Positions 6,201 through 62,040 of a stretch of 64,000 nucleotides of DNA are shown piece by piece. Below the pieces are notes generated by a model. That model saw only the letters and a program-made list of their open reading frames with translations, had not been told where the DNA came from and made no database searches. How positions within the stretch are numbered: the first letter of the stretch is position 1; each line of letters starts with the position of its first letter. This DNA comes from Magallana gigas (Eukaryota): assembly GCF_963853765.1 (NCBI RefSeq), contig NC_088857.1, forward strand, positions 51,956,001-52,020,000, written 5' to 3'. Position numbers and translations under genes: made by a program.

Positions 6201-9200
6201 AAGTTAAATATAATGAATGGTGTTTTTTAATCCAAGAGTACATATTTATTACTGGTAAGAAAGAAAGTATTTTTGTCTTTGCAGGATAACCCAATGAGTT
6301 TCAGAAATGTTGTTTTTAAATATAAAAGAAACGTCACTTATATTTGACATTTTTGAAAGCCCAAGAACATTTCAAAATCTTATCATATGTTGAGAACATT
6401 CTGAAAGTTCAGAGGAAACACTGGGGTTTTAGTCCAGAGCAAAACATTGGTCCTTCTTTATATTCTGCGATGTTCTGGACTTGATTAAAAAATGTATCAG
6501 GTAATTCCATAATTCACTCATCTTCATAGAGAATAACAATTAAAAGAAAACAAGATGTATCTACTCTATCTACTATGCGGGTCGTAATTCAAGATTTTAG
6601 CTCATGGTTCTTGACATTCACTTCTGTTGATGAATTATTTGATTTCACATTATTACCATTCAAAGCTGGCATTCTTAACAAATTGATCCATTACACAACA
6701 TAGAATTTGATTACAGTTCGGTTTAATTCATCATTTGTCAATTACAACAAACTGTGAACCATAAATTGTTTGGATAAGCAGGTTTTTCACATCATAACTG
6801 ATATTAAAGTATACATTACAGAGAGAATTTATTATGAAAATAATTGAACTCAAATATCTTAACAGACTGACTTTATTCACATTATTTAATCAAATCTGTG
6901 TAAATGAACAAGTACTTTTTTCAATCTAAAATACTGATTGATGGGTCTTTAAAGTATTGGAAGGTTATTGATACAATATTCTTACTACAACCATGATTGA
7001 AATCAAAAAGCCCAAAGAGCATTTGGAGCTATAATTAATAGTTAAAAAATTTAACATCTTGGGATGCATAATCAAATACCATTCATTACAAAACATTAAT
7101 TTAATTTGTAATCTAATAAAACTAATCATAGGTCAAAGCATTGAATAAATTAACAAATTTATATTAATATTCAGATTAGTGGTTGGTGGTCAGTCTAAAA
7201 GGACTTACCATAATTAGTCAAGTAAATGCTATACACATTAAATTCTGAAACAGATGGACTTACAGAAAAGGTTTACTCCCCATACAAGCAAATCTTGTCC
7301 CCTCAACAGAAGACAGCATGTGATAAGATAGCAGCTAATTATCATTTCTGAATTCCTAATTAAGCAGGATCTTGTGAGGTGAGACTCAATCTGTCAAACT
7401 GCTCCAGTGACAGAGTGTCCAGCCTACCGTAGCCGGTCACAGCGACGGTCACGCTACAGCAAACTGTACCAATAAAGGCATCAAAATCTGGGAACAGGTA
7501 CATGCCATAATTTCACGATAGGAACAACAAGTGTTCACAACAGTATCATATTATTTACATGTAATCAAACCTTCATACAAACAGGTGCATCAGTTCAATA
7601 GGTAATCCAAAAAAGATTTTAAAACATACATATTAGTATATCTACATTCCCATTATTTTTTTTGCAGGTAAAGTGTGTGGAAAGCTACTGCAGTTATAAC
7701 ACTGTAACACACACAGGGTACTGAAAGGTTAAAATGTCCAGTTTGATTATAATTTTACAAACGTTGAACGCTGCAAAATCAACGTCACAAGCAAAAATCA
7801 AAGTTCACACTTGTTGCTGTTACAGTGGCTCTTCCATTTATTTGAACTTGCCCTTAGGATAAAATAGTATTTTTAAGGTATAAATCACATTTGCAGACAA
7901 GGAAAGAAGTCAGGAACAACAAGTGTTCACAACAGTATCGTTATATTACATGTAATAAAACCTTCATACAAATAGGTGTATCAGTTCAATAGGTAATCCA
8001 AAAAAGATTTTAGAATTACAATACAATTAGTATAAACATAAAGTGGCTCTGCCGGGAGTCACCACACAGAATAAAGTTGCATCTGTATGGGTTAAGTACA
8101 TTTGTGCCTGTTATAACATCACAATCTGATACATACAAAGTGAATAATCTCTGTTATGTATTCACACCTAAAACTCACTTTCCTAATGGTAACTGTATTC
8201 ATAATGCAATCAAATGTATTACACAATCTACCTATCTGAGATGTAATCAAACTACAAACTAACATATAGAAACAGTAATGCACCAACAATTAATGTACAA
8301 TGTACAGTGATGCTGTATCTTTTCTTTCATGTTTTATAATTGGTTTGAGAGTACAGTAAAACTCAGTTATAGCGAGGTCCTAGGGACCAATGGATTTACT
8401 ACGTTATATCCGTAATTCGTTATATCCATATAAAGAATTCGTAATAATAATTATGGCAAATTCACTATATACATGTTCTCTTTCACCGGACTATAATTTT
8501 TGCTAATTGAGGCTTAAAATAAAAATATATTACTTTGATACCTTTTATAATTGGATTGTGAATTGAAAAACTTAGTACATGAAAATAAATTCATTCAAAC
8601 TATTATGATAAATGGTAGTGCGAATGTTTTAATTTGTAAAGAAATTCATAATAAAAGTGTTAAATTTAATTATTATTCACCTCTACAGGACTCAAAATCG
8701 GTTCGCTATATCCGTAAATTCGTTATATCTGAATTCATTATCACTGTAAAATTTTGCAAAGATTTGATTTAAATTTTTCTGGGGACTTAAAAAAACTTCG
8801 CTATATCCGAGAATTCGCTATATCCATGTTCGTACTAAACGAGTTTTTCTGTATGTTTCTGATGGTACTCAAAAGTGGTCTTCTGAATATTCATTACAGG
8901 CTTGGGCAAATGTAATCCATCAATAATGGATTGCCCAGTATGGACTAATATACTCCAAAAAGGTTCTTGACATGAAAGTCTGAGGGATAAATGGACAAAT
9001 GGACATACAGAAGAACGGATGCATGGACAGAAATAGAAAGGCTATTGAGAAGGAAAAATAGACAGATTGATGTGGTAATTTCTATGTACCTTATCTAAAC
9101 TTATTTCAAAGGGGGTATAATTACTATAGATTATAGGATAGCTATTTCAACATACAGCATGGAAGACAAGCAACATCTGAACTAGTATAGGACTACTTTC

Positions 9201-18448: not shown

Positions 18449-19107
18449 GTTTTGTATATATGATCTGTATATTTTGATCTCTATACATCGATTGTAAAAT
18501 TAATCTTGTTAAAAAAAATATGACTTAAACTCTCAGATAGAGGTTGGTTTACTTTGATAAGAATAATATTGTTAGACTCAATATAAGCACTGAGTTGCAG
18601 TATAATACTTCATAATTTCCCAAATTGATCAGACATTTGACATATACATCTATTTGATATCACACCATGTTAACTTCATATATTTAATACTATAATTTGC
18701 TCATCATTCCATTATGTAAAGTGCTGGTATAACGAAATCTCACACTTGGTAATATAAATTAACAAATCAAACACATGTAGCAATGCAAAGCCAAGCAAAA
18801 ATGTCAACAAAATGACGTCACATCCTCTATGACTAATAATTTACTAACGGTTGAACACAGAATAAAATGTAAAGTTCATATATAATAGATGAAAATTGCA
18901 TATCAGTCATATAAATAAACTTCTCCTATTCATTAACAAGACCAACTGAACATTAATACGACGATAACATACCCTATGAGCCGTTAATTTCTTCTATCAG
19001 TGGTCTGCAGTTAGGACGGTAACAATGGCACATTCAGGATTACGTCCCTTTAAACTCTTTGGCATTTGGAGGTAAATTACGTCTAAATGGAGAACTTCTG
19101 AGAGAAA

Positions 19108-22100
19108 ATGGGAATATTTAGTGTTTTTATAATAAACAAGGCAGGGGGATTGATTTTTCAATATGACCACTATTCACAGAGACCAGAAGTAGAAAAAACA
19201 TTCAGTTTTCCTATTGAACTTGTTTTAAAGCAACAGGATGAAAAATTGGTCGTAGCTTTTGGGGAAAGGGATGGCATCAAAGGTGTGTGGTATCAGGAGA
19301 AAACGTACCTATATAGGAGAAAACGTACCCAGGAGAAAACGTACCCAATTTCTAGGGCACGTTTTCTCCAGGAGAAAACGTACCCGGGTACGTTTTCTCC
19401 AAGAGAAAACGTACCCTATGAAAATCATAAATATACTACTCAATAGTTTTTATTACATTTACATACTATTTTACATAATGAATATACAGAAATGTATGAA
19501 TTTAATAGATATATGAATTTAATGCGTTATATTTTTAAAGGGTTTGGACAAATTAAATAATTTTCAGATGCATATTTCAATGCATAAATATATAGAAATA
19601 GATTGAAATATATTCATTTTATGAATTATATCTTTATTATAATTGTAGCAACTTTCATTTTAGTACGAATTAATGACCTGTCATTTAGTGTTATCAGCTT
19701 ACTTCTTCTAAGTTTTCCATTTACCGTTAGCCTTACCTATTTGAGTATCTCTGTGCGAGATCCCCTGATTGCCTTTTAATTATAGTGATAATCAATTTAA
19801 TACCTGTGCAGTTATTGTTATGTAATATTATGTATTGCCTCCCAATGCCCGCATTTTACACGCCTTATTCACCCATCTTCTTTTCAAAAAATTTTCCAAA
19901 AAAAAAAACCGCGCTATATCGACTTCTTAAGATACTCATCTTTTAGTTCTCCGAATTACAGATTGCAATAAAAACTAATTATTTAACGGTTTGTTTATGG
20001 AGAATTAATTACCGATTAATAAACTGCCCGAGCGATGTTAGTATATGTTCGTGTACGTATGTAACAAATTATTGCCTAAATAATTTATTAATGATATATT
20101 TAGAATTTAGAATAATTATGAAAACTATTATTTATGATTTTCATAGGGTACGTTTTCTCCTGGAGAAAACGTACCCTAGAAATTGGGTACGTTTTCTCCT
20201 GGGTACGTTTTCTCCTGGGTACGTTTTCTCCAGCATTCAGGTGTGTTACTGTGTATTATTATCATGTAAACCTCTTTCTTTCCCATGTCATTGAAAAAAG
20301 TAACTGTTGATCTGTAGATCTTAAAGCAGCAAGATGTTAATATATTTATAGTGATAGTAATATTGTTTGGTTGACAGCAGTGTGAATGTTTGTCCAATAT
20401 AATGGGTCTCACTAGCTTAGTGGTTAGATAGCTGAGACTGTTTGCCAGAGGCCCAGGGTTCGAGACGTTACACTTTTCACCACCTGTTACTGGTATATCT
20501 AAAAGAAGATAATGTTTTAAATCTATGTATTATTTATAGTGGGGTACACATTAATGGGCGTGAACGGAATCCCTGTTGAGGGTCGTTTTCTTCAAAATGA
20601 TGGAACAGATGCCATGGAAATAATAAATTCACCTCATAATTACCCCATCAACCTGAAGTTTGGCAGAACAAAACTCACAACCAATGAAAAAATAATGCTG
20701 GCAAGCATGTTTCACTCGTAAGTAAATACAGTTTTTCTTTTCTTTTTTCATTTAACTAATGGTAACACACCGAGTTGCAAAAACATGTATAATTATTTTT
20801 CATTGCAACTAGCTCTAGTCTAAATAAGGACGTTGAAAAATGATCTTGGGGGTGAATTTTGCTTCATCGAAAAATGTGTAACAATTATAAAAGTATTATT
20901 TGAACATTTACATTGAATGTATATGAATTCATTCAGAATTTAAAAAAAAATACTTATTTTCATTATATTTAATATTAGAGATTGTCATGCATAATTCTAA
21001 TAAAGATTATGATGATGAAATTCAGAGAACTTAATGTACATTCTTTCAAATTAAGAAATGTCATTTAATTGTAATTATCTATCTAATAGAGTCTTTTTTA
21101 TGAAATGTTAGATTTCCTTTCAAGTACTGGTCCCAATTATTAAATAAGTTCTTAGTTCCAAACTCTCTCTTTCTCTCACTCTTTCTCTGAGTATTGTGGT
21201 TTTTAGTAAGGTGCCATTTATATCTTATATTACTTGTTCTTTAGGTTGTTTGCCATAGGTTCCCAGTTATCTCCAGAGCCCCACTCTTCAGGAATTGAAG
21301 TCTTAGAGACGGATGGATTTAAACTTCACTGCTACCAAACTATGACAGGTAATGACAGAGCTAGGCCAACATGCTTAATGTTGTTAAATGTTTATAAAGA
21401 GGGTGATTAATCTTAAAAATAGCAGATGTTGTCAAAAGTAAAAGAGATACATGTATTGTAATTCTGTTACAGGGATCAAATTCATTGCCCTGACGGACCC
21501 CAGGCAGGGAGGGGTGGATGCACTTTTACGGAAAATGTATGAAGTGTTCTCTGATTTTGCCCTGAAGAACCCCTTTTATTCTGTAGATATGCCAGTACGG
21601 TGAGTGTGATAAATTTCTTAAATAGAAGTGTACACATTCATTTAATTTCTTTATGCAAGCAATTAACATGCTTTAGCTTTGTTATGTTTGAAGTAGTATT
21701 TAAGGTAGAATTTAAAATAATTAGTGTTGAATTGAACTGAATTAATATTAATAGCGATTGAAGATAAACAAGACAAAGAGAGAATTGGTACAGTTTTCGT
21801 TGCACATGAATCTTTGATAAATCTGATACACACATTTTTTTTGTTCTTCAACCAGTGAAAGTACTCTAATTCTACTGTTCATGTGTATTTAAAGTGGTAT
21901 GGGACATCTGTCTATATTTATGTGGATTAAAGTTCATTATAATTGGAATACTTTCACCGGTCTAGAATTTTCAAACTTTACAATTTTTAGCCAAAAAATA
22001 GCTTTTAAAAATATGTGGAGGGGTAAAAATTGTAAAACCCCGAACTCATGACTTATAGGTTCGTAGTAAACCCTCTAACCCACTGCGCTATGCTGTTAGA

Positions 22101-32231: not shown

Positions 32232-35200
32232 ATGTCTTCAAAAGCATTAAAAATGTAAGTATGCAATCGCAGCGACGTGTCATTGTTTATTTAAGATTTT
32301 AACCAGGACCTATGTAGTAACATCTTGTATGCAAGATCACAGTTTATACCAATCTAATAGCAAGGGCACTGTGTGGCACTGGTCAGAGGAGAGTCAATAA
32401 ACAATTTTAAGCCTTAAAAATATTGCTGAGATTAGGTTTACATATATTCCCTAGAGAATTTAATCTGTTACAGAAAATGAAAAACAATGTGACTCAGCAC
32501 TGCTCAAGATAATTCTTTGGACTTGATTGTGCTGTCTGGTCCTTAGAAGCACAATTTACCCGTATATGTCTAGATATTGTAGTGAAACTAGGGAATATGT
32601 CTGATGATGATAAAATGTCGTAATTTGGCATCAAGTATTCTGAATCACATGTGTGAAGATGTTTATTTTTCTGGAATATTCAGTTAACCTTTTTTAAACC
32701 ATGCATTGGCTTTTTTTGGCCAGTGGATGCCTTGATCAGTGGTTTGATGTTTGTGATTTTCTTGGTTGTAGCTTAGTCTCGGGCGATGTTGAGGGGAACC
32801 TAGACAAATTGTTTGGCCGTGTCAACACCATACAGAAGAAAAGTGGTAGCTTTGATGTAGGTTTTATATCACTACTTATTTATTTTTGTTTCCATGCCAT
32901 TAAAAAGGGTAAAAACAAATACAACTTTCAATACACCTATTCAATGTTTAGCATTCATCTCTTTTTCTGAACCCAGAATAAAAGTAGCTACAGTACACCA
33001 GGATCATTGTTTTAGAATTTTTATTACAGTTGCTGTTGTGTGTTGGAGAATTCTTTGGGAGTAACACCAGTGAATGGGAGAAGTACAAGAGTGGTCAAAG
33101 CAAAGGTAATCTAGTCAAATAAAATCCAGGTTAGTACAAAGTCAATACAAGTCTAGCAGAGGTTAGTAAAATCATATCAGAGCATAGTCAGAAATAAGGA
33201 ATTGAGCTTGAGAAAGTATCAAATGTTTATTGCGAACAATTTTAGTCCATAGAATGGTAAAGAATTCAAATCTAACAATTGCCTTTCAACTTGGATCTCA
33301 ATGTTTATGGTCAAATTGATTGGAAGATATACTAGGTTTACTTTTACAAAGTGCTACATGTATGGTTATCTAGGAAATACACTTAAATAAATATTATTAA
33401 CAGCAAGTAACTGGTACTGGTATGGCGGTATGTTACAGTTATGAAATATAGAAATCTAAGTGTAAATTCATGATGTGAAAATTGAAAAGATAAGAATAAA
33501 TTTGTTTTTCAGTCCCAATAAGCACCCTGATACTAGGACCCAATGACCCAACCTTGTCGGAGTGTTATCAGAACAACACAGATGGGGTGGAGCTTTGTGA
33601 AAATCTGACCTACCTAGGTTTGTATGATTGTCAACATTTACTGACTTTCAACTAATTATTGATGACATTTTGGTTTTATTAGCAATCCACAGTCTACTGC
33701 AGCTGACTCCTTTCAACTTTCATGTTGGAAAGTCCACACTTTGATAAATTGTTAAGAGATGAAATTGTGTTTTTTTTAACGTCCTAATTTTCAGACATCC
33801 AAAATTTAAGAGTTTTACTCTCTCACTGATGATTTATTGAAATCAAAGGGCAGTGTCGGATGACTGAAATGTTCATTGGAAGTTGGATTTTATCTTCCAT
33901 GTCTTCTGCTTTCCTTTTCACAGAGCAAGTTTAAATCCTTGGCTAGTAAATATCTAAGTTTTTTAATACAAAGTGAATATAAAATGAAATAGGTAGTTTT
34001 GGACAAGTGGAATGAAGGAGAGACTAATTTTTTAGAAACCGATTTTTTTTTTCAGGTAGAAAAGGAACTTTCACAGGTAGCTCAGGCCTGTCTGTGGCGT
34101 ATCTGAGTGGGAAGGAAGGGGACCGGTCCGAGCTGGGGGTCTTCTCTCGGCAGGATGTGTCCAGCCTTCTTCTGCCCTGTGAGGGGGACACAAAGTTCAG
34201 GGGAGTGGACATCTTACTGACCTCTCAATGGCCAAAACAACCAGCTAAATATGCATCAGATGTGGTGTGTGTTATGATCATTTATTTATGATCTCTACTG
34301 TTAAAGTTTAGAAAATTACAATAATTTTTGCAAACAAAGAAGTTGGAAAATCAAGCCATTGTTGATAATGTTGCTCAATGAATCATTTTAACAAGACAAT
34401 TGATTATAGGTAGTTATAGTCAACAGCAATCAGATGAGGGTTTGTGTATTAATAATGATAGCATAATACAATGTAATTCATAATGGATATAGGCATCCAA
34501 AAGACATCAAACCTCATGAAATCTTGAAATTGAAGGGTCTACTGTACATGGTTTATGATATTAAATGATTATGATATGGATTCAATGTTTAATTGATATT
34601 ACGAGGAGTACACTTTATATATAATCAGTGACTAATACGAACAAGATAGATTTGGGATTGACTGAATATATATCAGTGACTCATATTAACATGATATATA
34701 TGGGGTACAACTGTACAATGTATATTGTATCAGTGAGTGATATTTACGTGATATATATAGGGTACACTGTATATAATGTCAGTGACTGATATTAGTATGG
34801 TACATATGGTGTATACTGTATATAATGAAACTGATATGGAGTACATTGTATATAATGGGACTGATTTTGTGACCTTTGACTCAGGAGCTGGACACAGAGC
34901 AGTGTGGGTCGGACCTAATCAGTCAGCTGGCCCTCGGGCTGAGGCCTCGCTATCACTTCTGTGCCTCTGAAGATGTCTTCTATGAGCGACAGCCTTACAG
35001 GTAAATTGTACAGGCCTTGTTGTCACCAAAATTTACAAATCACTCAACTTGGTTCTAAACTCAAAAATCCTAAATAGAAAAGTGCATGGATTTGAGATCA
35101 GTACTCAGACTTGAGTTTGCATATTAACAGTTTGAAGTGAACTTATCTGAATGAGTAGTAGTTTCCATAAATTCAGCTGTAAGAGAAACTCTATCAATGT

Positions 35201-38200
35201 CCTCGGTATTGCTGATTTGTAGAAATCACAAGGTCTTAGTGGAGAAAGAGAAACATGTGACCAGGTTCATTTCCCTTGCCAAAGTAAACAACTCTCAGAA
35301 GAAAAAAGTAAGCATTTCCTGTGAAAAGTTATTTCTCGGTTTATAAAAGTAAATCACTGACTTGTTTCAATATTAATTTTTTTTTCATAACTTACCGGTA
35401 CTTATTGTGTATATGTATGAAATTCAAAACAAATCTAATGCAGTTAAAGAAAAAAATTATAAAAACAGACAGAATTTAAGTTGTTAGATATTATTTTTAC
35501 ATTACTTTATTACTGTTATAGAGAAAATCCTTCATTCATCGCACTTCATTATAAGTTTTTTTTACTGAATATTGTGGCTGTATACCAGCAATTATATACA
35601 AGTATTTCCTGACTTTCTTCTTTGCAGTATTTATATGCTTTCAATATCATTCCACTTTGCAACATGGATGAGGCGGAATTAACCAAACAGCCAAGTGATG
35701 TAACAGAGTGTCCATATAAAAAAGGGTCGTTTAACCATCCTGACAAGGTGATTGTTTGTGTACAAGTCAATTAGACACACAGTACCAGTCTGTTGTTTAT
35801 GTTTTACTGGACGATTTGTAATACATGTATCTGCTTATTATTGTTAAACTTTAATGTTCTTCCTTTAATTACTATTTCTTAAAGCTTAATGATGCACCAT
35901 TGACAAAATACATTACCTTCCCGCTTATGCAGAGGAATACAAGATTTGTAGAATCAGAATAAAGTCTGAATGCATTCACACACATTTTTGATTTTATTAT
36001 ACCCCGTTCCCTGCAAACAAGTTAGGGGGTATATAGGAATCACCTTGTTCATCTGTCTGTCCGTCTATCTGTCTGTGCAATGGTGTCTGGTCCTGATCCG
36101 TATTTTTGTCATGGAGGAACATTGGAAATAACTACTTCACACGAAGACTGCTTATGACTTGAGGGTGTGTCATGATTTTGAACCAAGGTTATTTAGGCAA
36201 GTTGAAGGTCACTGGAAGAAAAAGTTCATAATCTGTGTCTGCTCTACACCTTTCTAATGAAGAAACATTGGAAGTTTCTATTTCATATAAAGATTGCTGA
36301 TGACCTGAGGGTGCGTCATAATTTTGAGCCGAAGTCATTTGTACAACTTCAAGGTCATTTTAGAAAAAAATGCATAATACCTGTTTAGACTTATCTTGTA
36401 ATGAAAAATGATAAGAAGGCAAAACTTGATACAAATATTGCCTGTGACCTGAAAATATGTCCTGACCTTGAGATGAGATCATTTTTGCAAGTTCAAGGAC
36501 ACTATGAAAAAAAAAATGGTGAATCATTACTTTCCAATATAGAAATACTTGCATTATTATATTTTCATAGCAGGAGGATCTGCTTGCTAACAGTATATCT
36601 AAAAAATACATGTAATCAGGATTGTACACAATTTTATCTGTTTTTCATGTTTTCCAGGATGAGCCTGCTCAGTTTTTCTATGATACCAATACTACAGAAA
36701 AAGGGAAAAAGAGGAAGAGAGAAGATAAGAGAGAACAAAAAAAGCACCGTATGTATTTTACCCCAGTGTAAATAGTACATACCTCTCTTAAATATATATA
36801 AAGTACAAACAGGTGTTCAAGTAGCGTAGTGGACAATGCACTCGCTTGTCACCGCTGCGACCCGAGTTCGATCTCCGTGATCGACAGTGGTTGTATGTGA
36901 TAGGGTATGGCGGTTGCCCGCTTGGACACATGGGTTCTCGTGGCTTCTTCTCACACCAATGACCCCCTCGCGCTAACATACGTGCCAACGAGAGATACTA
37001 ATAAAGTTGTAGAACTTGTTTATCAATCGTTGTAAAATAAATAAAGTTCATTTTAAAAAAAACCCAAAAAACATGTACTTATTAAGTTTGATTGGGAACT
37101 GAAGGTAAATGTTTTGAATTTTTTACTTGCATAAGTATGTACATGGATTACATAAATATAACACTGCTGTTTGTTATAGCCCGCCCGTCCGGACCCTGCT
37201 GGTTTTGTCTTGGATCCCCTGAGGTAGAGAAACACCTTGTGGTCAGTGTAGGGACTGAGGTAAAAGATCTGATCTCCTGGTACATTAAATTGTTATAGAC
37301 AACAGTTACTCTCTTTACATGTACATTAACCTAAAATTTTGTACTGTTCTTAAATATAGTATCTCTCTTCACATCGTTATATTTTTTTGGAAGTTAAATT
37401 TCATGTATAATCTTTTAAATTTTCAAGCATTTTCATAAAATTGCACTAGTGACAGATTTTGTCTTTAAAATATTTTACCCATTTGACTTCAGGTTTCTAA
37501 ATTGTTATTTTGATATATTTTCATTATACATTTAACAGTGATATCCTGTATAACTGACCGTCCATACCTACTGATTCTGTTGTAGTGTTACCTGGCCCTG
37601 GCTAAGGGTGGCCTAGTGCCAGACCACGCCCTAATTCTGCCAATCGGTCACCACCAATCAATGGTCCTCGCCCCTGATGGTGTCCGAGAGGAAATCGACA
37701 AGTATCTTTTGTTCAGAAACCATTATACTATATCACAAGAAACTTTGTAACATTGAATATTTGTTCCTCTCATTATATCTGGTACATGTATTTGATCTCC
37801 TTCACCTGAGAGTTTGGACCTTAATTTGATCAATGATACAAAAAAGCTCTGATTGAACTCTACAAGCAGAACAATAAAAGTGTCATATTTTTTGAGAGAA
37901 ATTATAAGACTCAGCATCTTCAGATACAGGTAAGTGGAAATCGGGTACAAGTCACCAGATTAAAACAGGTACAGGTTACCTGATTAAAACAGGTACAAGT
38001 TACCTGATTGCTGTTTCATAAAAACAATTCAACCATTTACTTTCGTTCCTTATAATGCTATATCATTCTCATCAATCTAAAGTTTTCCAAAGATTCAAAT
38101 ATTTCTAGACATACATACTCTATTAAAGCGAGTTTCATTGTTATATAAACTTAATGCAGGCAGTGCCATTCCCGGATGACAGAAAGCAAGAAGCTAAAGA

Positions 38201-39045
38201 TAGCTTTATGGAATGTGCAGAGGCTGAATCTATAACACTAGATGAAATTCCTAAACACTCTGATCTCAAGCAGGTATAAAATTTCATTCAAATTGTTAAA
38301 ATTGTAAAAAAAAAAAAAAATTGGGGTGTATCAAATATAGTCATTAAATCATTACCCCTTGAAGCCAAGGTTTCCAGAGTGTAGAAAATAGAAAAGGATT
38401 TATTTTAACAAAAAATCAACCAGAAACCTTTCCTAAGGTTAAATGTAGCTCATAGACCCCTTGAATTTCTTGTTTTCCTAAGTGGTTGAGCTGAAATACA
38501 CACCATTAATAGCCTGCTGCTCCTGTTACTTTAGATCGTTCCTGTTGGGGCACCTTATTTTTATGCAGAACTTCCCATAGGGGAAAAATTGCTGCATAGG
38601 ATCTCCAAAAATTTTCCTCTCCAGTTTGGCAGGTAACATAATTATAATTAGGATAAACACCTGTAATGATGGGTGTTATCATGTTTTTTGTATTTCAGTT
38701 ATATGAATGTAATTTGCAAAGAAAGATTCAAGTTTAAAAAATAAGATTATGGTATATTTAATACAAAAAATATATTATCATGGTGCTACTGTCTTTAGAG
38801 TGGTCATTGATTTCAAGGGATGTTTGTAATTGGCCTCTTAATACACTGTATAGGTTTCTTTGATTCAGAAAGTATTTCTCTTGATAATTTTGTTTCTCTA
38901 CAGAGAGGTTCTGGCCAGCGTCCAACTGCTGAACATGCCAGAGCGCGTGGACTGGAAGGCTTGTAAAATAAATCGGCAGGAGGAGGAGACACATGCTGAG
39001 GATTTTAGGAGGCAGTTCGAACAGTTTGATTTTACTTTGGAATAA
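32232..39045 (+). CDS. CWF19L1: CWF19-like protein 1 (Drn1 ortholog; spliceosome/debranching-associated), 517 aa, 15 exons
   Basis: Exons 32232-32254, 32772-32856, 33030-33105, 33513-33617, 34056-34264, 34885-35000, 35223-35307, 35628-35747, 36658-36748, 37180-37259, 37586-37701, 37836-37929, 38160-38273, 38535-38632, 38904-39045 (1554 nt). Motifs [50 protein letters not shown] and FPLQFGREVLA. Intron 11 needs a non-canonical TG acceptor. Confidence 0.96.
34610..34870. repeat. Degenerate ~50-bp tandem repeat just upstream of CWF19L1 exon 6
   Basis: Recurrent tcagtga(c/g)t(g/c)atatt...gatatatat...gtacactgtatataat units. Confidence 0.6.
35997..36600 (+). mobile_element. Helentron-associated (HINE / pearl-like) element with three ~145-bp core repeats
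   Basis: 5' ttatacccc...gggggtata subterminal IR, (GTCT)n-like tract, and tgac(t/c)tga... units at 36155, 36301 and 36445. Confidence 0.7.
36812..37060 (+). mobile_element. tRNA-derived SINE, probably full length
   Basis: A box TAGCGTAGTGG (36822), B box GAGTTCGATCT (36864), GC-rich central domain, and an A-rich tail with aataaa. Confidence 0.75.
37702..37835 (+). other. U12-type (minor) intron of CWF19L1 with apparent GT-TG termini
   Basis: Donor GTATCTTTT. Branch-like ACCTTAAT with its A at -12. The only frame-preserving 3' junction is caaTG|A TAC AAA. Confidence 0.7.
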
Positions 39046-39900
39046 AAACAGCAAGTGATCAGTTTTAGTGGAGAGTGTCAAAACTTTAAAAATATGTGTG
39101 CAATAGTTTGAGGAACTGGAACACTCTGTTATATCTGACCTGACAGCATGAAATGTATGATAAATTTGGTCTGTGTGTCTTGGAGGTTGTATTTTAGCAA
39201 AGAATCATTGAATATGTCTTGAGAAACATGTTTTTACCAGTAAGTGGTAATGAAATATTTAAAATGAAATATTCAAATGAAAAATATCTCCATTTAATAT
39301 AACAGAATATTTTTGTTAAATTGTATTCAGTTTTGTTGCAACAAATGTGCAGCCATCTACTGAAGTTAAATTCTGTAAGACTAAGTATTCTGAAACCATG
39401 TAATAATAGATGCAAGGACGTGAATTTGTATTAAAAAGTTTTTAAAATTTTTATTCATTTAATTTGTCATTTAAAGAACATGTACTCAGTTGAGTACATT
39501 TTAATGTATATTGTTTATAAAAGAAAATGAAAGAAATTTGTAAAATAGTAACAATGATTTTATTAGTATATCCTTAATTCATCATAACAATGTAACTAAA
39601 CTTTACTTATACAAGAAATCTGCTGCTAAAGAGTGACATCTTTTTATACATGTAGATGGATTCGTACCCAAAAATAAGGAATGTACATGCAACATGTGCA
39701 AGAAATTCCTTATGAATTAGGCTATTTGTTGGATAAGAATGTATTACAATTTGCATTCCTTTAAAAAAATACTAGTATTTTTTAAGCCATATATGTTGAT
39801 CCATTAAAACTTAACTTTCAATATATTATCACCTGAGAGAAAGTAATAAACTTTCCTTAGTTACAGAAACAACCTTTTTCTACAATGAATTAAAACAGAA

Positions 39901-46161: not shown

Positions 46162-49100
46162 ATGGTCACCAGGCTGCTTTCCTTCCTCATCTCTGTGTTC
46201 CTCTTGCTGACCGGGGGGCCGGGACTGACCACCACACTCACCCTCCCTCGCCACACCCAGAATCAAGGTTAGTAGTTGAGAATGATATATTCAAAATTAT
46301 TAGTATATATAGCTTATACGGTAAGTATTTTTTTTTATTTGTACATAGTTACTTTCGGAAGTGACGTAAATATTAAAATTTAATGAAAAGAGCTTTTAAT
46401 AATCTTATTAATTTGAATAATTAATGTTTGTGAATTTATTTATAATGATATCTAAATAATATAAATCAAAAGATTATCAATAAACAAAAATAACAAATTG
46501 CAAATTAAGCGTAGAAATTATAACACTCTTCAGATAGGTAACAGATATATGGTCCGGTTAAATATGAAACAATTTATCTTTCACACGGTACAAACTCTTA
46601 CCTGATATATTTTTCGGGGGCGATAATGTAAACTTCGTATGTTAATTTGCTTTTGTTTCCAAATATGGTGAATATATTTTTTCACTAAATGCCACTATTT
46701 ACATAAACCTGTGAATTTTTACCTACTCCTCCTACGTTTGTGCTTACCCGTAGGTTATTTTGGATGATCGCAAAGTAATTTTTCTTAAATCTTAAAAAAA
46801 GGAATATTCTCAAATAGGGTTAGTTTTGATAACTTATTTTGGTCTTAAACATGTATCAACTTTGAAATTTGGACTATAATAGATATTATATAGAATAGAC
46901 ACCGTCTTCTCATCTTAAAATAATGACAACATTGAGCCATAATTATAAATACCTTCGAGGAATTTTTACTATAAAACCAGTACTGTAATATTCAATTAAA
47001 AGGGTGTTCGCTTACAAAGCTTTCCAATAGTTTTTCCTATCCTATTTTATGTGTTAAAAGAAAGTGTGTCATATCAATTAGGGGTTTGGTAAGACCTGCA
47101 GGCACCGGGACAGAGATCGCACGCTACTGTAATCAGACTGATCTACATACTGTACAGGTGTAACACATCGTAACGGTGGCATACCAGACAGTTAAAACCT
47201 TGTCTAAATAATCCCCTGGAATAACACCCGCCCACTCCAACATCAAGAATTTTTTTCATCAATTCATTGACTTTCTTTAAAAGATAATCGTACAGTTTTC
47301 GATTTAAGATTGAAGTCAATCGCAAAAATTTATACTCTCAAATGGTCACCCCTCTCCTAGTCCGAAATACCTGACGTTTTTCTCGCTTTTTTTAACGATT
47401 TTGATATTTACTTGCCAGAAAATATGAAAATCGTTAAAATAAAAACAGGAAAACGTTAGGTATTTTGGATTACCCCTCTCCCTCTAAATCAAACCCCCTT
47501 TAAATTATTTTGTGCGATTAGTTTTGTAAAGTTATTTCATTTAAACAACATTAAACAACTGTGGTAAAGATAGGAGATATTTTAAGTATTTTATTTACAT
47601 TATTTATTACGTGTTTGTTTTCCTGCTCTCATGAAGGCACACTTTATGAGCCCTTTATGAAGACGAAGGTAAATGAAGTAATTGATTAGTATATAATTAT
47701 TTATATGTACAATAATTTGTTTGTATTTTCCCCGGTTTTAGGGATGCACATGGCTACGTAATGATAGTTTGTACATAATAGACCTGTAAGTTTTACGGTG
47801 TTATTTCAGAGTCTGTACCGGTCACTCTAGAGATCCACGACCCCACGGGCAGACAAAAAAGAAGCGCAGGGGAAACAACTGCCGAAAATATCCAAGTGAA
47901 GGTGACCTCTCCATCTGACGTCACGATACTCTACGTGAAACGTGAACGACGTCACGTGACCACGCCTAAAATTTACAGTGCCACTAAAAATGGTTTTTTT
48001 GAGGAGGAGACAATGAAAGCAGGAGTAAGAATTTGACATTAAACTTGATCAGTGTTAGAAATAGTGAACTGTTTTATGTTTTTATTGTGTATTTTCGTTG
48101 GTTCTCTATGTTTTTCCACAATTATCCATCACAATTTATGTACATACAATGATTGACCGCCCAGTCAACACACATATATATGAACATAACCCTTGATATT
48201 TCATATCCTCAGGAGAGTATTTTATACGTAAACGACACAGTCAAAACGACTCTCACCCTGACGCAAAATAACATGACGTCACAGAAATTTGTAAGTAGAA
48301 CACATTATAAACTTTAAAAAATATAATAAGAGAGATATCATAGACTTTATGTGTATGAACGAATATTGATAGCAGCATTTGGAATGATTGTTTATAAAAC
48401 CCTTGGGTTTTTTCAGTATGGAAGCTTTGTTAAAGATGGCCATGTACATCTAATCGAACCGGACCCCTTGGCGGGCCCGGTGGAGGGGGAGGAAGTAGGA
48501 CCCCACGTGGTCAATAGGATAGAACTGGTCGTCGATTACTTTCGGGACGCCGTGGTCATTCAAGGTACACACACAAAAGAAAAAACCACCACTCAACCTT
48601 CCGTCATTACTTAGCATAATCATTTAAACGTAATCGTTATTTAAGCATGAAGTTTGGTGATTGCTACAGTTTAGTTTAGAAATCTTTGACTTTTAACTTT
48701 TAATATAAAAGTTATCATTTCTATCACTAAACTGATGACAAATTCTTCTGTCGTCTCACAGATAATGAGGATTTACCGCTGAAGGAAGACAGCCAGAGAA
48801 TCAGTCGCGAAAGACGTCACGTGACACGAAACACCATTCGAACAGATCCCAATCAACAAAACCGAGAGCGTCGTCAAGTGATTAAGAACGACCTGTATGT
48901 GGAGTATGGGATCGTAGCAGACTACAAGAACTACCAGAGGTTTGTCAAACAGCGTAGGATAATTTTTGGGAGTTGATTATCAACTCTCCTATGCAGTTAC
49001 TCAGACAAACCGAAAGGGAAACAGTGTTTGGACCTCAGCACAAATCATCGCTGCTGACAAGACTTAGTTCTTGAAAATGATTGATGAATTCGATGTAATG

Positions 49101-49772
49101 TATGCTAAAGCATTGTTTTTCAAGGAAACTTATTTATAAATACCTTGAAAATAGTCAGATTTTAAATGGTACGTACAATTTAAATATTTTTTGTAGTCGT
49201 ATGTATTCCTACGCCAGAGTTCAATATAGTCTCGTTCAACTGGACGCTCGGCTGTCTCCGTAAATGCTTGTCGGAGATTTACGGTGTCAGCCGAGCGTTT
49301 GGTTGAACGAGAGTAGAGTTCAATATTGCTTGGATCCATACAATTTTTGAGAAATATTTTGTATTACTGATACATAGTTTGATTGAATTAATTTTACTCT
49401 AAATATTATTTAACATGATTCATATGGGGGGTTCTCGACATTCTTGTCGAAAAAGTCTAAAAATTCATATTATAAAAATGTGTGTAATTCAAATACAAAT
49501 TAGAAACTACATGTACTTGTCATGCAAAATAACATATCATTGATTTTAAGATAAACAAACATCGACAAAATCAACTCCCGTCAGTTCTTCAGTACTTTGA
49601 TTAAAAGATTTTGTTATCAAATCCAAAAAATTATAATATCAAATATTCACTGTATTTTTCTCTGACAGATGGTTTTCCACCACGAATAGCAGTCTATCAA
49701 ACTCTGAGAGAGATCACGTGACAAAGACACGGATGGTGGAATTTTACGATCACGTAGTCAACTCGGTAAGCA

Positions 49773-49850
<78 letters not shown>

Positions 49851-52612
49851 AAATCTTCATTTACATGTATAATTAATTGTTTTACAGATAGACGCTATAT
49901 TCCGGTCGGCAGATAGTGAGAAATACACATTTAACATTATTCTCTCTGGCATCGTCATCTTCAACGTAAGTATGAATGATAATCTCCATACTTCACAAGC
50001 CGCGACCTCACTGACTAGACAGTCGGTACTTATAAGGTCATCTGTTTACAGGAGACCAACAGCCCGCCTTGGACCCAGCACCACGCTGTGTGCCCCGGAT
50101 GTGACATTGTAGACGACTACGAGGTGCTCAGACAGTTCTCTGATTGGTCGAAACAATTCCTACAGAACATCATACCACATGACCACGCCGCACTGTTTAC
50201 CGGGTAATTCAGTACAACTTATTGAAAAAATTGTAGCATGTTCTTATGGCGTAAAAACTAAAATGAGTATCATATTGCATACATGAAGATGCCTTCAATT
50301 ATTTTACCAGGTTTGACTTATACTACAAAGATCTGGATTCCCCCAAAACAATAGGTATGATGTTAAAATGTCTTAACATGCACTTTTGCGGCGTTTCTTT
50401 ATTTTGAATTGCATTACCGATTTAGTAATATATTCCTTTTGTGATTGATTATAAAGGTTTGTCGTTCCTGAGTCGGATGTGCACTAACTGGTCAGTGTCT
50501 GTGATAGAGGAGAAGATGAACGCTCTCACAGTGCACGTCGCAGCGCACGAACTCGGACACAAGTAAGACTATATTTAGCAACACAGAGTTACCGAGAAAC
50601 ACATATCGAACATGTTGCTTAATATCCTTTGTTACCGTCTGTTCACAGTTTTGGGGCCTCTCATGACGGCAGTCAGAACGCAGCGGTGTGCACGGCCACA
50701 GACCTCAACCTGATGGCGTCCAAGATGTCACGTGTGACGGACCCGACCAAGGCCCGCAACCCTTGGACATTCTCCGCCTGCTCACTCAACAGCATTTATG
50801 AATACGTGGACAAATTGACTAGGTAAATGGATATAGCCTCTCATATTTTGATGGAATACTTTAAGCTGATAGATGCACCATGATATCCATTTCTTATTGT
50901 CTATCTTTAGGGAGAGACGGAACTGCTTGCTCGGAGTCCCTGCATTACAAAACAGAAACTTCCTTCCACAGCCGGGTCTTGTTTACTCAGCAGACGAACA
51001 ATGTCAGAGTTCCTATGGCAACCGTTCACGTGTTTGTAGGGTAAGCACGAATCACTTAGATATTGTTGTCCTATGAAAGTAAACCGCTTAAACTTTATTG
51101 AAACATAAGTTAGTAATAAATGCAACTGATACAAGTTAATAAGCTGTTTTAACTATTTTACAGAATTATCACCATGGAGATTGGAACACACTTTGTTATG
51201 GACTTGCTTGTTTAGTACCCAAACAATCAGAATGTCACGTGATATTTCCCCATGATGGGACACCATGCGGATATCAGAAGGTTCGAATCGTTATCAATTA
51301 ACATTGGATTGTTTGCTCTGTATTGTTTGAGTTGACCTGTTAGCGTTTTTCAAAACCATTTTTGGAAACCACACAACTAATAAATATCAAGAGGATTGCC
51401 GTTTTCCCATTTCCGTTTTTTTTTTTATTTCCGGCTATCGACTTAAGATAATTTTTCATCATTATTCAACCAGGAAGCTTTAGGCAATCCGTCTTAGTCA
51501 ATCTTTCCCCTTACCAAGGATAGAGGAAGGACATGAGTATATGTACACTGAGTCGTCAGAGTACTGGTTTAATAAGTACGTAATGTTAGATGAGTTTTCT
51601 CTAAACTGTTTACGTTGATTTTAGATCAATAAAAAAATGTAACAACAACATTCTGTTATATATTCTGAATATAATGTATCGTAAAATTTCACTTAAGAAA
51701 ATGATCGGACCTCGTTATCGAATACGTAGACTAAACAATGAAACAAATGACATAGATCTTCTAGCAGTCAGAAATCAAGGAAGGGGGTGGGGGTGGGGGT
51801 GGCTCGGGAGTAAATACAGTTGAACATCAATTGCGTTCTTTTTCCAGTCAACGGCTGCTTGTAAATGATTGCAATTAACGTATTTTTTTTCTATTTCTGT
51901 TGCAGTGGTGCATACAAGGACTCTGTGTAAACAGTTCAAAGGCCAGTAAGGTTTCAGGTAGGTCTTCATATCTCCGAACGACTTATTGAGGGACTACATG
52001 TACTTAGTCAGGCAATAACTGGCTACTTATGGAATAATTTTTGATTTAGATTTATGCACATTTTGTATTTGAACAGACGACTGTCCGCTTGGTGATGACC
52101 CGTTTGTGACGTGTTCACCGTCTGATTGTAAAACAGGAAGCGGAAGACATGGGGACTGTTGTCACTACTGTCAACAACTTAAAACAACAACATCAACAAC
52201 AACAACAGAAAATCCAACAACAACAGCAACAACAGAAATTCCAACAACTTCACTTAGCACTAGCACAACAACATTTACAGAAAATAAATCGGTGTCAGAA
52301 GAGGACAATCCTGATATTACTACACATGTAAACACATGGAGACCGACCTCAACATCGCCGCCAAACAACTCCAATAATACCACATCATCCCCAAACGCCA
52401 ATCCAGGTCCCAACACCACCACTCACCCTGTTCCTGGATCCACCCCAGTCGCAGACAACACCACCATTTTTTTCTCTGGAACCATCACGGTCCCCGACAC
52501 CACCACCTACAGCACGAGGTCCACCCCCCAGACGATGAGTCATATACCGATCATTACACCCCACCTAGAGGCCTCGGTGGGCGTCTTCCTGTCCCTGGTC
52601 GCTTTACTGTGA
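46162..52612 (+). CDS. ADAM/ADAMTS-like M12B (reprolysin) zinc metalloprotease, 736 aa, 15 exons, with a Thr-rich stalk and hydrophobic C-terminus
   Basis: Exons 46162-46267, 47810-48024, 48213-48290, 48417-48564, 48762-48939, 49669-49765, 49888-49965, 50052-50203, 50311-50354, 50457-50562, 50649-50822, 50911-51040, 51164-51280, 51906-51957, 52077-52612 (2211 nt, in frame). Signal peptide, furin-type RQKR and RERR sites, HELGHNFGASHD zinc motif, Met-turn LMA, FSACS, and an ADAMTS-type Cys-rich region (YSADEQC...HDGTPCGYQKWCIQGLCV). Confidence 0.92.
49227..49315. mobile_element. 89-bp fully palindromic MITE with a 10-bp target-site duplication
   Basis: TAGTCTCGTTCAAC ... GTTGAACGAGAGTA flanked by GAGTTCAATA at 49217-49226 and 49316-49325. 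Confidence 0.85.
49778..49843. repeat. (GA)n microsatellite
   Basis: Seen directly, about 12 bp after a splice donor. Confidence 0.95.
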
Positions 52613-61091: not shown

Positions 61092-61158
61092 ATTATTTTT
61101 CACGTGTTGGGTATACTAAACACTCCTCCTATCACTGAAGAGTTCATAAACAGAAATC

Positions 61159-61386
61159 ATGGGGCTGACAGGCATACTCAGTCACATCGCAAGGTTGTCT
61201 GTTTTATTAGTGCTCGCAATTTATTTTTACATTTTAGAGATCATCAAGGTCTTGTCTCCTCCCAAGAAGAAGGATGTCCGTAACGAGATCGTGCTAATCA
61301 CGGGGGCGGGTCACGGTATAGGACGGGAGATCGCCCTGGAGTTCGGGAGACGGGGGGCACGGGTGGTGATATGGGACATCAACAAG
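61159..61386 (+). CDS. Short-chain dehydrogenase/reductase, SDR16C family (RDH10 / SDR16C5 / HSD17B11-like), exon 1 only
   Basis: N-terminal hydrophobic anchor, then IVLITGAGHGIGREIALEF...VVIWDINK (TGxxxGxG), ending AAG|gtac at 61386. No further exon was found in the window. Confidence 0.9.
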
Positions 61387-62040
61387 GTACTCGCTAATCA
61401 CAAAGTAACACATATCATGTTGAGGGGTGGATCTTTTGTTCTTAATTCACTTGCAATAAAAATTTATATAATTGATTCATTTAATTAATTTCATTAAGTT
61501 CATTTGTAACTAAATGAATGTACTGTAGTGAAATTATGGTTTTTCCCTTCCCGTTTATTCGCAAGTTTGCATTAGCCTACTGTAATTTATGCAGAATATT
61601 TTAAGTTATTTTTGAATGAATGAACAATTTTATATACATGCACCATGGAACGTTTGTCCTCGAATTACATTTACTGTCACTGATTTTGGTTGTCCTATAC
61701 GTACACGTGTATGTATTTTTGTAAATGTACATTTAAAAGTAGGCTGCATATTGAGAAAAACCCTAGCGTGCAAGACATCAATAAATTTAAATAATTTAGT
61801 TATTCAATCACTGAAGCATACGTTTATATACATGTATATATCCTGTTTGTGAGACACTTTCACTCAAGATCATCTGCTGTATAACGCATGTTGCATTGCA
61901 GGGTTTTTTTCCTTCCATGATTAAGTTGTAATAGCTAAACCTTTTATTGATTAACGTGTACAGTGATGTCTAGAGTGACATAAGTGTTAAGATAGGGACG
62001 TCTTCCGATGAGTATCAGTCTTCTGATGAGTATTTCATAG

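What the first reader, a model, noticed from the sequence alone, without database searches (positions are those of the whole stretch)
37702..37835. CWF19L1 intron 11: minor-class intron that appears to end in TG
The donor GTATCTTTT is one mismatch from the U12 consensus GTATCCTTT, and ACCTTAAT matches the U12 branch consensus (TCCTTRAY) with its A 12 nt from the junction. Nearby AGs (37810, 37812, 37866, 37869) give a frameshift or stop. Only caaTG|ATAC restores the conserved D-K-Y-K. The gene itself encodes a spliceosome/lariat-turnover factor, so an inefficient intron here could act as feedback.
Basis: partly seen in the sequence, partly recalled or inferred. Interest (0 to 1): 0.72.

Follow-up and report, generated by a model that had tools for sequence, protein, structure and literature searches.

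The report
Oyster CWF19L1 minor intron ending TG
A 134-base intron in the Pacific oyster CWF19L1 gene is removed exactly at a TG instead of the usual AG. It is an old minor-spliceosome (U12-type) intron whose last-but-one base changed in oysters, which makes it a rare but already catalogued subtype.

Summary
RNA from two studies joins 37701 directly to 37836 (ends GT..TG, no alternative placement). An independent DNA contig matches 37055-37935 without a difference, so TG is not an assembly error.

The intron carries a U12-type donor (GTATCTTTT) and a branch box (ACCTTAAT) whose A lies 11 nt from the end. It has no pyrimidine tract.

The same phase-2 intron sits at the same codon in other invertebrate lineages:
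- Five non-oyster lineages have GTATCC/GTATCT donors, TCCTTRAY-like boxes 10-14 nt from the end, and end in AG.
- A second, deeply diverged oyster-like lineage also ends in TG.
- One lineage has an ATATCC donor.
- At least 24 further read-through protein fragments imply RTATCC at this position.
- Fish-like fragments read straight across the position, which suggests the intron is absent there.

GT-TG U12 introns are already listed for mouse and human, so this is a new member of a known rarity. The scan had already found a second GT-TG minor intron 6 kb away (PPCS, note s1-392498). Two reader slips: an AG at 37845-46 was overlooked (it gives a stop), and the intron number may be 10.

The parts
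37586..37701 (+). CWF19L1 exon upstream of the intron (CYLALAKGG...EEID + first two bases AA of the Lys codon)
   Evidence: Joints at 37257/37584 (cut +2) and 37701/37836. Pfam CwfJ_C_1 profile 35-71, E 2e-07. tblastn of P0018.
37702..37835 (+). 134-nt phase-2 U12-type intron with GT..TG ends
   Evidence: Joint that skips 134 bases, ends GT..TG, 'both' = 0, in X15 contigs and X21 raw reads. DNA contig of X4 is identical.
37702..37710 (+). U12-type 5' splice site GTATCTTTT (consensus RTATCCTTT, T for C at +6)
   Evidence: The same GTATCTTTTG is the donor of the orthologous intron in L003 and L006. GTATCCTT is the donor in L001, L002, L009 and L011.
37818..37825 (+). Branch-point box ACCTTAAT (consensus TCCTTRAY); likely branch A at 37824 (or 37823)
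   Evidence: A at 37824 is 11 nt from the last intron base, against a stated optimum of 11-13 nt (PMC3584512).
37834..37835 (+). Non-canonical 3' terminal dinucleotide TG
   Evidence: Orthologous introns end in TG in L002 and in AG in L001, L003, L006, L009 and L011.
37836..37929 (+). Downstream exon (A completes Lys; [31 protein letters not shown])
   Evidence: Joints at 37701/37836 and 37926/38157 (cut +3). Pfam CwfJ_C_1 profile 74-105.

Best explanation
This is an ancient U12-type (minor-spliceosome) intron of CWF19L1. The U11/U12 di-snRNP recognises the donor GTATCTTTT and the branch box ACCTTAAT together. The 3' cut is then made at a fixed short distance (11 nt) from the branch A, at the first G in the permitted range, although the base before that G is T and not A.

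The terminal G that pairs with the first intron G is kept; only the penultimate base differs from GT-AG. The ancestral state at this intron was probably AG, as in five other invertebrate lineages. In the oyster lineage it is TG, and it is TG in two deeply diverged oyster-type sequences.

Shown here: the junction, the DNA, the motifs and their spacing, and orthologous conservation. Inferred: dependence on the minor spliceosome, selection of the 3' site by distance, and the AG-to-TG direction of change.
For: - Junction and DNA: an unambiguous GT..TG joint in two RNA studies, and DNA identical in an independent run.
- Motifs: the donor has 8 of 9 matches to RTATCCTTT, the branch box CCTTAAT lies 11 nt from the end, and there is no pyrimidine tract.
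- Chance: the donor-plus-box pair is expected 0.04 times per window.
- Orthologues: the same codon and phase are interrupted in L001, L003, L006, L009 and L011, with GTATCC/GTATCT donors, TCCTTRAY-like boxes 10-14 nt from an AG end. L002 has GTATCCTTAC, TCCTTAAA and a TG end 11 nt from the A. L008 has ATATCCTTTT at the same codon.
- Read-through fragments: 24 representative fragments read Y-P after the split codon, which implies RTATCC. For 19 of the 20 that are long enough, the next codon can start with T.
- Literature: the 5' site and branch sequence define U12 introns, other termini occur, and the optimum branch-to-3' distance is 11-13 nt (PMC3584512). GT-TG is listed among U12 introns (PMC1557818 Table 2; PMC8280824).
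Against: - No experiment here shows dependence on U11, U12, U4atac or U6atac.
- The donor has T instead of C at +6.
- RNA support is modest: one contig and two raw reads.
- The taxa behind the orthologous loci are unnamed metagenome or run contigs.
- The 3' ends in those loci are set by reading frame, not by RNA.
- In L002 the exon starts with GTAT, so the junction there could be drawn in five ways that give the same mRNA.
Confidence: 0.88

Rival explanations
1. A major-spliceosome (U2-type) intron that uses a TG acceptor, as described for some human U2 introns.
For: TG can serve as a 3' splice site in U2-dependent introns (PMC2374985). The intron starts with GT.
Against: Those human TG sites are described as alternative sites paired with an AG (TG-AG tandems), and U12 introns were set apart in that screen. 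Here the nearest downstream AG (37845-46) gives a stop and no joint to it was seen. The donor AA|GTATCT fits U1 poorly (inference). There is no pyrimidine tract. The only branch-like box is 11 nt from the end. The intronic donor and box are conserved across distant lineages, which is typical of U12 introns and not of U2 introns.
Confidence: 0.05
2. The true junction is slid by 1-4 bases (TA-GA, AT-AT, TC-TA or CT-AC), which also encodes D-K-Y-K.
For: The bases GTAT / ATAC at the two borders make several in-frame junctions that give the same protein.
Against: The slid forms give GACAAGTAC or GACAAGTAT. The reads and the contig were placed at 37701/37836 with 'both' = 0, that is GACAAATAC.
Confidence: 0.02
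3. Assembly error or rare allele: the real genome has AG at 37834-35.
For: None found.
Against: The X4 contig over 37055-37935 has no difference. An unspliced X15 contig from another haplotype (4 SNPs) keeps TG. Fourteen runs hold 83-100% of the sampled words of the stretch. A second oyster-type lineage also has TG.
Confidence: 0.01
4. An add-on to the main reading rather than a replacement: the TG end makes splicing slow, and this throttles production of a lariat-turnover cofactor as a feedback loop.
For: CWF19L1 is the homologue of yeast Drn1, which enhances Dbr1 debranching (PMC4105757). Non-canonical U12 termini often splice less efficiently (PMC3584512). X15 holds an unspliced contig across the whole intron (depth 5.58, against 12.1 for the joint), while three downstream introns have no contig. 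Read-through meets a stop after 16 codons.
Against: Contig depths are not quantitative, and the contig may be DNA or another individual's pre-mRNA. The upstream U2 intron also has a contig (depth 2.55). X21 raw reads show no intron reads, though depth is very low. The intron is U12-type with AG in other animals, and no link between Drn1 activity and minor splicing is known.
Confidence: 0.08

Closest known systems
U12-type GT-TG introns catalogued in mammals (SpliceRack, Sheth et al. 2006, PMC1557818 Table 2; G-type minor introns in de Wolf et al. 2021, PMC8280824)
   Same: U12 donor and branch box, first base G, last base G, penultimate base T. A rare variant of the GT-AG subtype.
   Different: A different gene and phylum. 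Here the orthologous intron can be followed from AG (other invertebrates) to TG (two oyster-type lineages). The donor also carries T at +6.
PPCS intron 2 in the same window
   Same: GTATCCTT donor, TCCTTGAC box, TG end 10 nt after the branch A (sequence checked). Same genome, 6 kb away.
   Different: An unrelated gene on the opposite strand, 1.5 kb long, with a consensus donor. I did not re-test its RNA junction.
TG acceptors of U2-type introns (Szafranski et al. 2007, PMC2374985)
   Same: The 3' terminal dinucleotide TG is used in vivo.
   Different: Those are alternative sites paired with an AG (TG-AG tandems) in major-spliceosome introns. Here the TG is the only junction seen, it sits 11 nt from a U12 branch box, and there is no tandem AG.
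[quoted passage not shown] 2006, Table 3)
   Same: The same orthologous intron shows different termini in different lineages (GT-AG, GT-TG, AT-..).
   Different: Documented there for human and mouse only. Here it is across unnamed invertebrate lineages.

Membership tests
U12-type (minor-spliceosome) introns | 5' splice site matching /RTATCCTTT | tested here: met
   GTATCTTTT at 37702-37710, 8 of 9 matches. Orthologues carry GTATCCTT (L001, L002, L009, L011), GTATCTTTTG (L003, L006) or ATATCCTTTT (L008). 24 read-through fragments imply RTATCC.
U12-type (minor-spliceosome) introns | Branch-point sequence TCCTTRAY close to the 3' end | tested here: met
   ACCTTAAT at 37818-37825 (7 of 8 matches). 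The orthologues have TCCTTAAA, TTCTTAAT, GACTTGAC, GGCTTAAC, GACTTAAT and TCCTTGAC.
U12-type (minor-spliceosome) introns | Short branch-to-3' splice site distance (optimum 11-13 nt) | tested here: met
   11 nt in the window and 10-14 nt in six orthologues. The optimum is quoted from PMC3584512.
U12-type (minor-spliceosome) introns | No distinct polypyrimidine tract | tested here: met
   The last 40 nt are mixed sequence with purine runs (GAGAG, GG); the neighbouring U2 introns end in pyrimidine-rich runs plus AG. This was judged by eye, not scored.
U12-type (minor-spliceosome) introns | Canonical termini AT-AC or GT-AG (usual but not defining) | tested here: not met
   The ends are GT..TG. The termini do not define the class (PMC3584512), and GT-TG is a listed U12 subtype.
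U12-type (minor-spliceosome) introns | Removal depends on U11, U12, U4atac and U6atac snRNPs | not testable with these tools
   Needs knock-down or inhibition experiments, or branch mapping.
CWF19L1 / Drn1 (CwfJ) protein family | CwfJ_C_1 domain in the exons that flank the intron | tested here: met
   Pfam PF04677 hits above the cut-off for three exons, with contiguous profile ranges 9-32, 35-71 and 74-105. tblastn of the 532-aa relative P0018 finds 13 aligned segments in order over 32773-39039.

The most novel reading that the evidence does not exclude
Oysters may use a relaxed 3' rule for G-type minor introns, in which any G about 10-12 nt from the branch A is accepted. NG ends would then be much commoner than in vertebrates and could persist for tens of millions of years. 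Both RNA-supported U12 introns in this 64-kb window end in TG, and the CWF19L1 one is also TG in a second, deeply diverged oyster-type lineage. A slower TG end could also throttle a lariat-turnover cofactor.
Probability: 0.12. Interest if true: 0.55.

Novelty: new member of a known kind. Interest (0 to 1): 0.33.

Why it matters
The practical consequence is gene annotation. Gene callers that insist on AG or AC ends break CWF19L1 here. The protein libraries hold dozens of truncated read-through ORFs that end a few codons into this intron.

Biologically it is a clean, RNA-supported case of a U12 intron whose 3' site is set by distance from the branch point and not by an AG. It also has a traceable history at one orthologous position: AG in five lineages, TG in two oyster-type lineages, an AT-type donor in one, and apparent absence in fish-like fragments. 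It adds a data point to the question of how freely minor-intron termini drift. It does not reveal a new mechanism.

Tried and rejected
- **Slid junctions and other acceptors.** All in-frame slid junctions are rejected by 'both' = 0. All nearby AG and AC acceptors are rejected too: the AG at 37845-46 gives a stop, and the in-frame ends at 37838 and 37841 would drop Tyr or Lys-Tyr and show no joint.
- **Literature.** No paper links CWF19L1 with a minor intron or U12-type introns with Crassostrea. Dietrich 2001 and 2005 (PMC86782, PMC1370826) are not held, so their results are cited only through the review PMC3584512.
- **Failed look-ups.** L008 ends before the 3' end of its intron.
- **Rfam.** No RNA family was found in the window.
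- **Other candidate U12 introns in the window.** Two ATATCCTT + TCCTTAAC pairs on the minus strand (60278/56514 and 30525/29862) have no coding exons next to them, and ATATCCTT at 50622 lies inside an ordinary GT-AG intron. I did not count any of them.
- **X17.** It held only the repeat at 37004-37050 and nothing of the gene.
- **Left out under the operators' rules.** The joined (spliced) protein model was never built for or sent to a search; all searches used single exons by reference. The contig of P0031 (mammal-like, possibly human) was not fetched.

Full report
**What is in the window.** The window is low-GC animal DNA.

A CWF19L1 gene lies on the + strand from about 32.7 to 39.05 kb. A 532-aa relative (P0018) aligns in 13 segments, in order, over 32773-39039. 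Three exons hit Pfam CwfJ_C_1 above the curated cut-off. CWF19L1 is the homologue of yeast Drn1, a partner of the lariat-debranching enzyme Dbr1 (PMC4105757).

**The observation.**
- The exon ends ...GAC AA at 37701.
- The intron begins GTATCTTTTG.
- ACCTTAAT lies at 37818-37825.
- The intron ends ...TCAATG at 37835.
- The next exon begins A TAC AAA AAA GCT.

In frame, the triplet just before TAC is TGA. With the donor at 37702, only a cut after the TG therefore restores D-K-Y-K.

Because the borders read GTAT and ATAC, four slid junctions would also encode D-K-Y-K, with mRNA GACAAGTAC or GACAAGTAT. RNA is therefore needed to decide.

**RNA and DNA evidence.** I laid two RNA contig sets (X15, X17), one raw-read RNA run (X21) and one DNA-like run (X4) on 37000-39100.
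- A joint from 37701 to 37836 skips 134 bases, with ends GT..TG and 'both' = 0. It appears in X15 (contig depth 12.1) and in two X21 reads with different starts and 63 letters on the shorter side.
- 'both' = 0 means the read has A, not G, after GACAA.
- The four neighbouring introns in the same call are all GT..AG.
- X4 has an 881-nt contig over 37055-37935 with no difference.
- An unspliced X15 contig (37672-37865) from another haplotype carries four SNPs but keeps TG.

Assembly error and a rare allele are therefore excluded as far as contigs can show. X17 carried only a repeat and nothing of the gene.

**Why it is a U12-type intron.**
- The donor matches RTATCCTTT at 8 of 9 places (T for C at +6). 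By inference, that change would turn a G-C pair with U11/U6atac into G-U.
- The branch box matches TCCTTRAY at 7 of 8 places.
- The A at 37824 is 11 nt from the last intron base. The review PMC3584512 gives an optimum of 11-13 nt and states that the 5' site and branch sequence, not the termini, define the class.
- There is no pyrimidine tract, unlike the neighbouring introns.
- Donor and box at this spacing are expected 0.04 times per window by chance. The single match coincides with RNA-verified boundaries.

**Orthologues.** A search of the upstream exon (38 aa, by reference) against 1.84 billion representatives gave 112 proteins. Many are ORFs called on genomic contigs that read through the donor into the intron.
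- 24 of them continue -Y-P-, which implies [AG]TATCC at the same codon and phase. In 19 of the 20 that are long enough, the next codon can start with T, as in RTATCCTT.
- Four continue -Y-L-L-, like the oyster.

I fetched DNA for several of them and set the 3' ends by reading frame:

| Locus | Donor | Branch box | Distance to end | 3' end |
|---|---|---|---|---|
| L001 | GTATCCTTGG | TTCTTAAT | 10 nt | AG |
| L003-5 | GTATCTTTTG | GACTTGAC | 14 nt | AG |
| L006/7 | GTATCTTTTG | GGCTTAAC | 14 nt | AG |
| L009/10 | GTATCCTTTA | GACTTAAT | 12 nt | AG |
| L011 | GTATCCTTTC | TCCTTGAC | 11 nt | AG |
| L002 | GTATCCTTAC | TCCTTAAA | 11 nt | TG |
| L008 | CA\|ATATCCTTTT (AT-type) | not reached | not known | contig ends first |

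L002 is 95% identical in protein but only 79-85% identical in exon DNA, and its intron is 286 nt long. A global alignment of the two introns scores only about three standard deviations above shuffles, so they are barely alignable. Its intron ends ...CCCTG|GTATAAA, which is TG again.

Fish-like fragments read straight from the upstream intron across this position into the downstream intron. This suggests the intron is absent there. No paper lists CWF19L1 as a minor-intron gene.

The simplest reading is an old U12 GT-AG intron whose penultimate base became T in the oyster lineage and has stayed T across a deep split. Independent origin of the two TGs cannot be excluded.

**How it most likely works.** U11/U12 binds donor and branch box as a unit. 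After the first step, the 3' cut falls at a fixed short distance from the branch. The first G in the allowed range is 37835; the G at 37828 is only 4 nt from the A. The G-G pairing of first and last intron bases is kept, and only the penultimate base is unusual. The same geometry holds for L002 (TG at 11 nt) and for the PPCS intron 6 kb away on the other strand (TCCTTGAC, TG at 10 nt). These mechanistic steps are inference from established knowledge of U12 splicing. Nothing here tests snRNP dependence.

**Comparison with what is known.** GT-TG is already a listed U12 subtype: one mouse case in SpliceRack (PMC1557818 Table 2), and it is named among human G-type minor introns (PMC8280824). Switching of termini between species at non-canonical U12 introns is also documented. 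TG acceptors in U2 introns exist, but as alternative sites paired with an AG (PMC2374985), which does not fit here. The finding is a new member of a known rarity. The scan had already reported the neighbouring PPCS case (s1-392498) and many ordinary U12 introns in this genome. That argues against a wholesale change of the 3' rule in oysters, although a raised share of NG ends remains possible.

**The feedback idea.** One unspliced contig spans the whole intron in X15 (depth 5.58 against 12.1 for the joint). Three downstream introns have no such contig, but the upstream U2 intron has one (depth 2.55). Contig depths are not quantitative, DNA carry-over is possible, and the raw-read run is too shallow. 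Read-through would stop after 16 codons. I rate this as untested speculation.

I also did not fetch the contig of the mammal-like, possibly human, fragment P0031. The large word-index protein search was not used, because Pfam and the representative search settled the gene's identity.

Noticed in passing
L008:1580-1600 (Logan SRR26493808): At the same codon of CWF19L1 this lineage has CA|ATATCCTTTT, an AT-type U12 donor. The orthologous intron therefore shows GT-AG, GT-TG and AT-type forms in different animals. The contig ends before the 3' end of the intron.
   Followed up: partly
proteins P0023, P0035, P0038, P0040, P0059, P0061, P0082, P0084, P0087: Vertebrate-like (fish- and mammal-like) ORF fragments start in the upstream intron and end in the downstream one, yet read E-K-Y-K-x-x-L without a break. 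This suggests that the intron is absent there. One mammal-like fragment (P0031) instead diverges after E-K-Y; I did not fetch it because it may be human.
   Followed up: no
proteins P0001-P0034 and others: Public protein collections hold dozens of truncated CWF19L1 'proteins' that are read-through ORFs ending inside this U12 intron. Their tails (Y-P-F/L/S...) serve as a fingerprint of the RTATCCTT donor.
   Followed up: yes
window 37004-37056: A stretch of about 50 nt just upstream of the CWFC exon has enormous depth in every run (5,000-8,000 summed word depth in X15 and X4; about 100 raw reads in X21 running on into unlike sequence). It appears to be a very high-copy, transcribed short repeat.
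   Followed up: no
window 60278 and 56514 (- strand); 30525 and 29862 (- strand): Two pairs of perfect ATATCCTT and TCCTTAAC motifs in donor-to-branch order (about 3.8 kb and 0.66 kb apart) have no obvious coding exons beside them. They could be chance, or U12 introns in untranslated or unrecognised exons.
   Followed up: partly
window 37936-38010: The next (U2) intron begins with about three tandem copies of a unit of roughly 25 nt (caggtacaRgtYacc[t/a]gattaaaa), each containing GGTA donor-like sequence. Only the first GT, at 37930, is used.
   Followed up: no
window 19102-21600, 47780-52610, 61150-61490: Other genes in the window on the + strand are a TRAPPC4/synbindin-like gene, an ADAM-type zinc metalloprotease (HELGH..SFGASHDG split by an ordinary GT-AG intron at 50562-50648) with a Thr/Ser-rich tail, and a short-chain dehydrogenase exon (VLITGAGHGIGREIALEF).
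   Followed up: no
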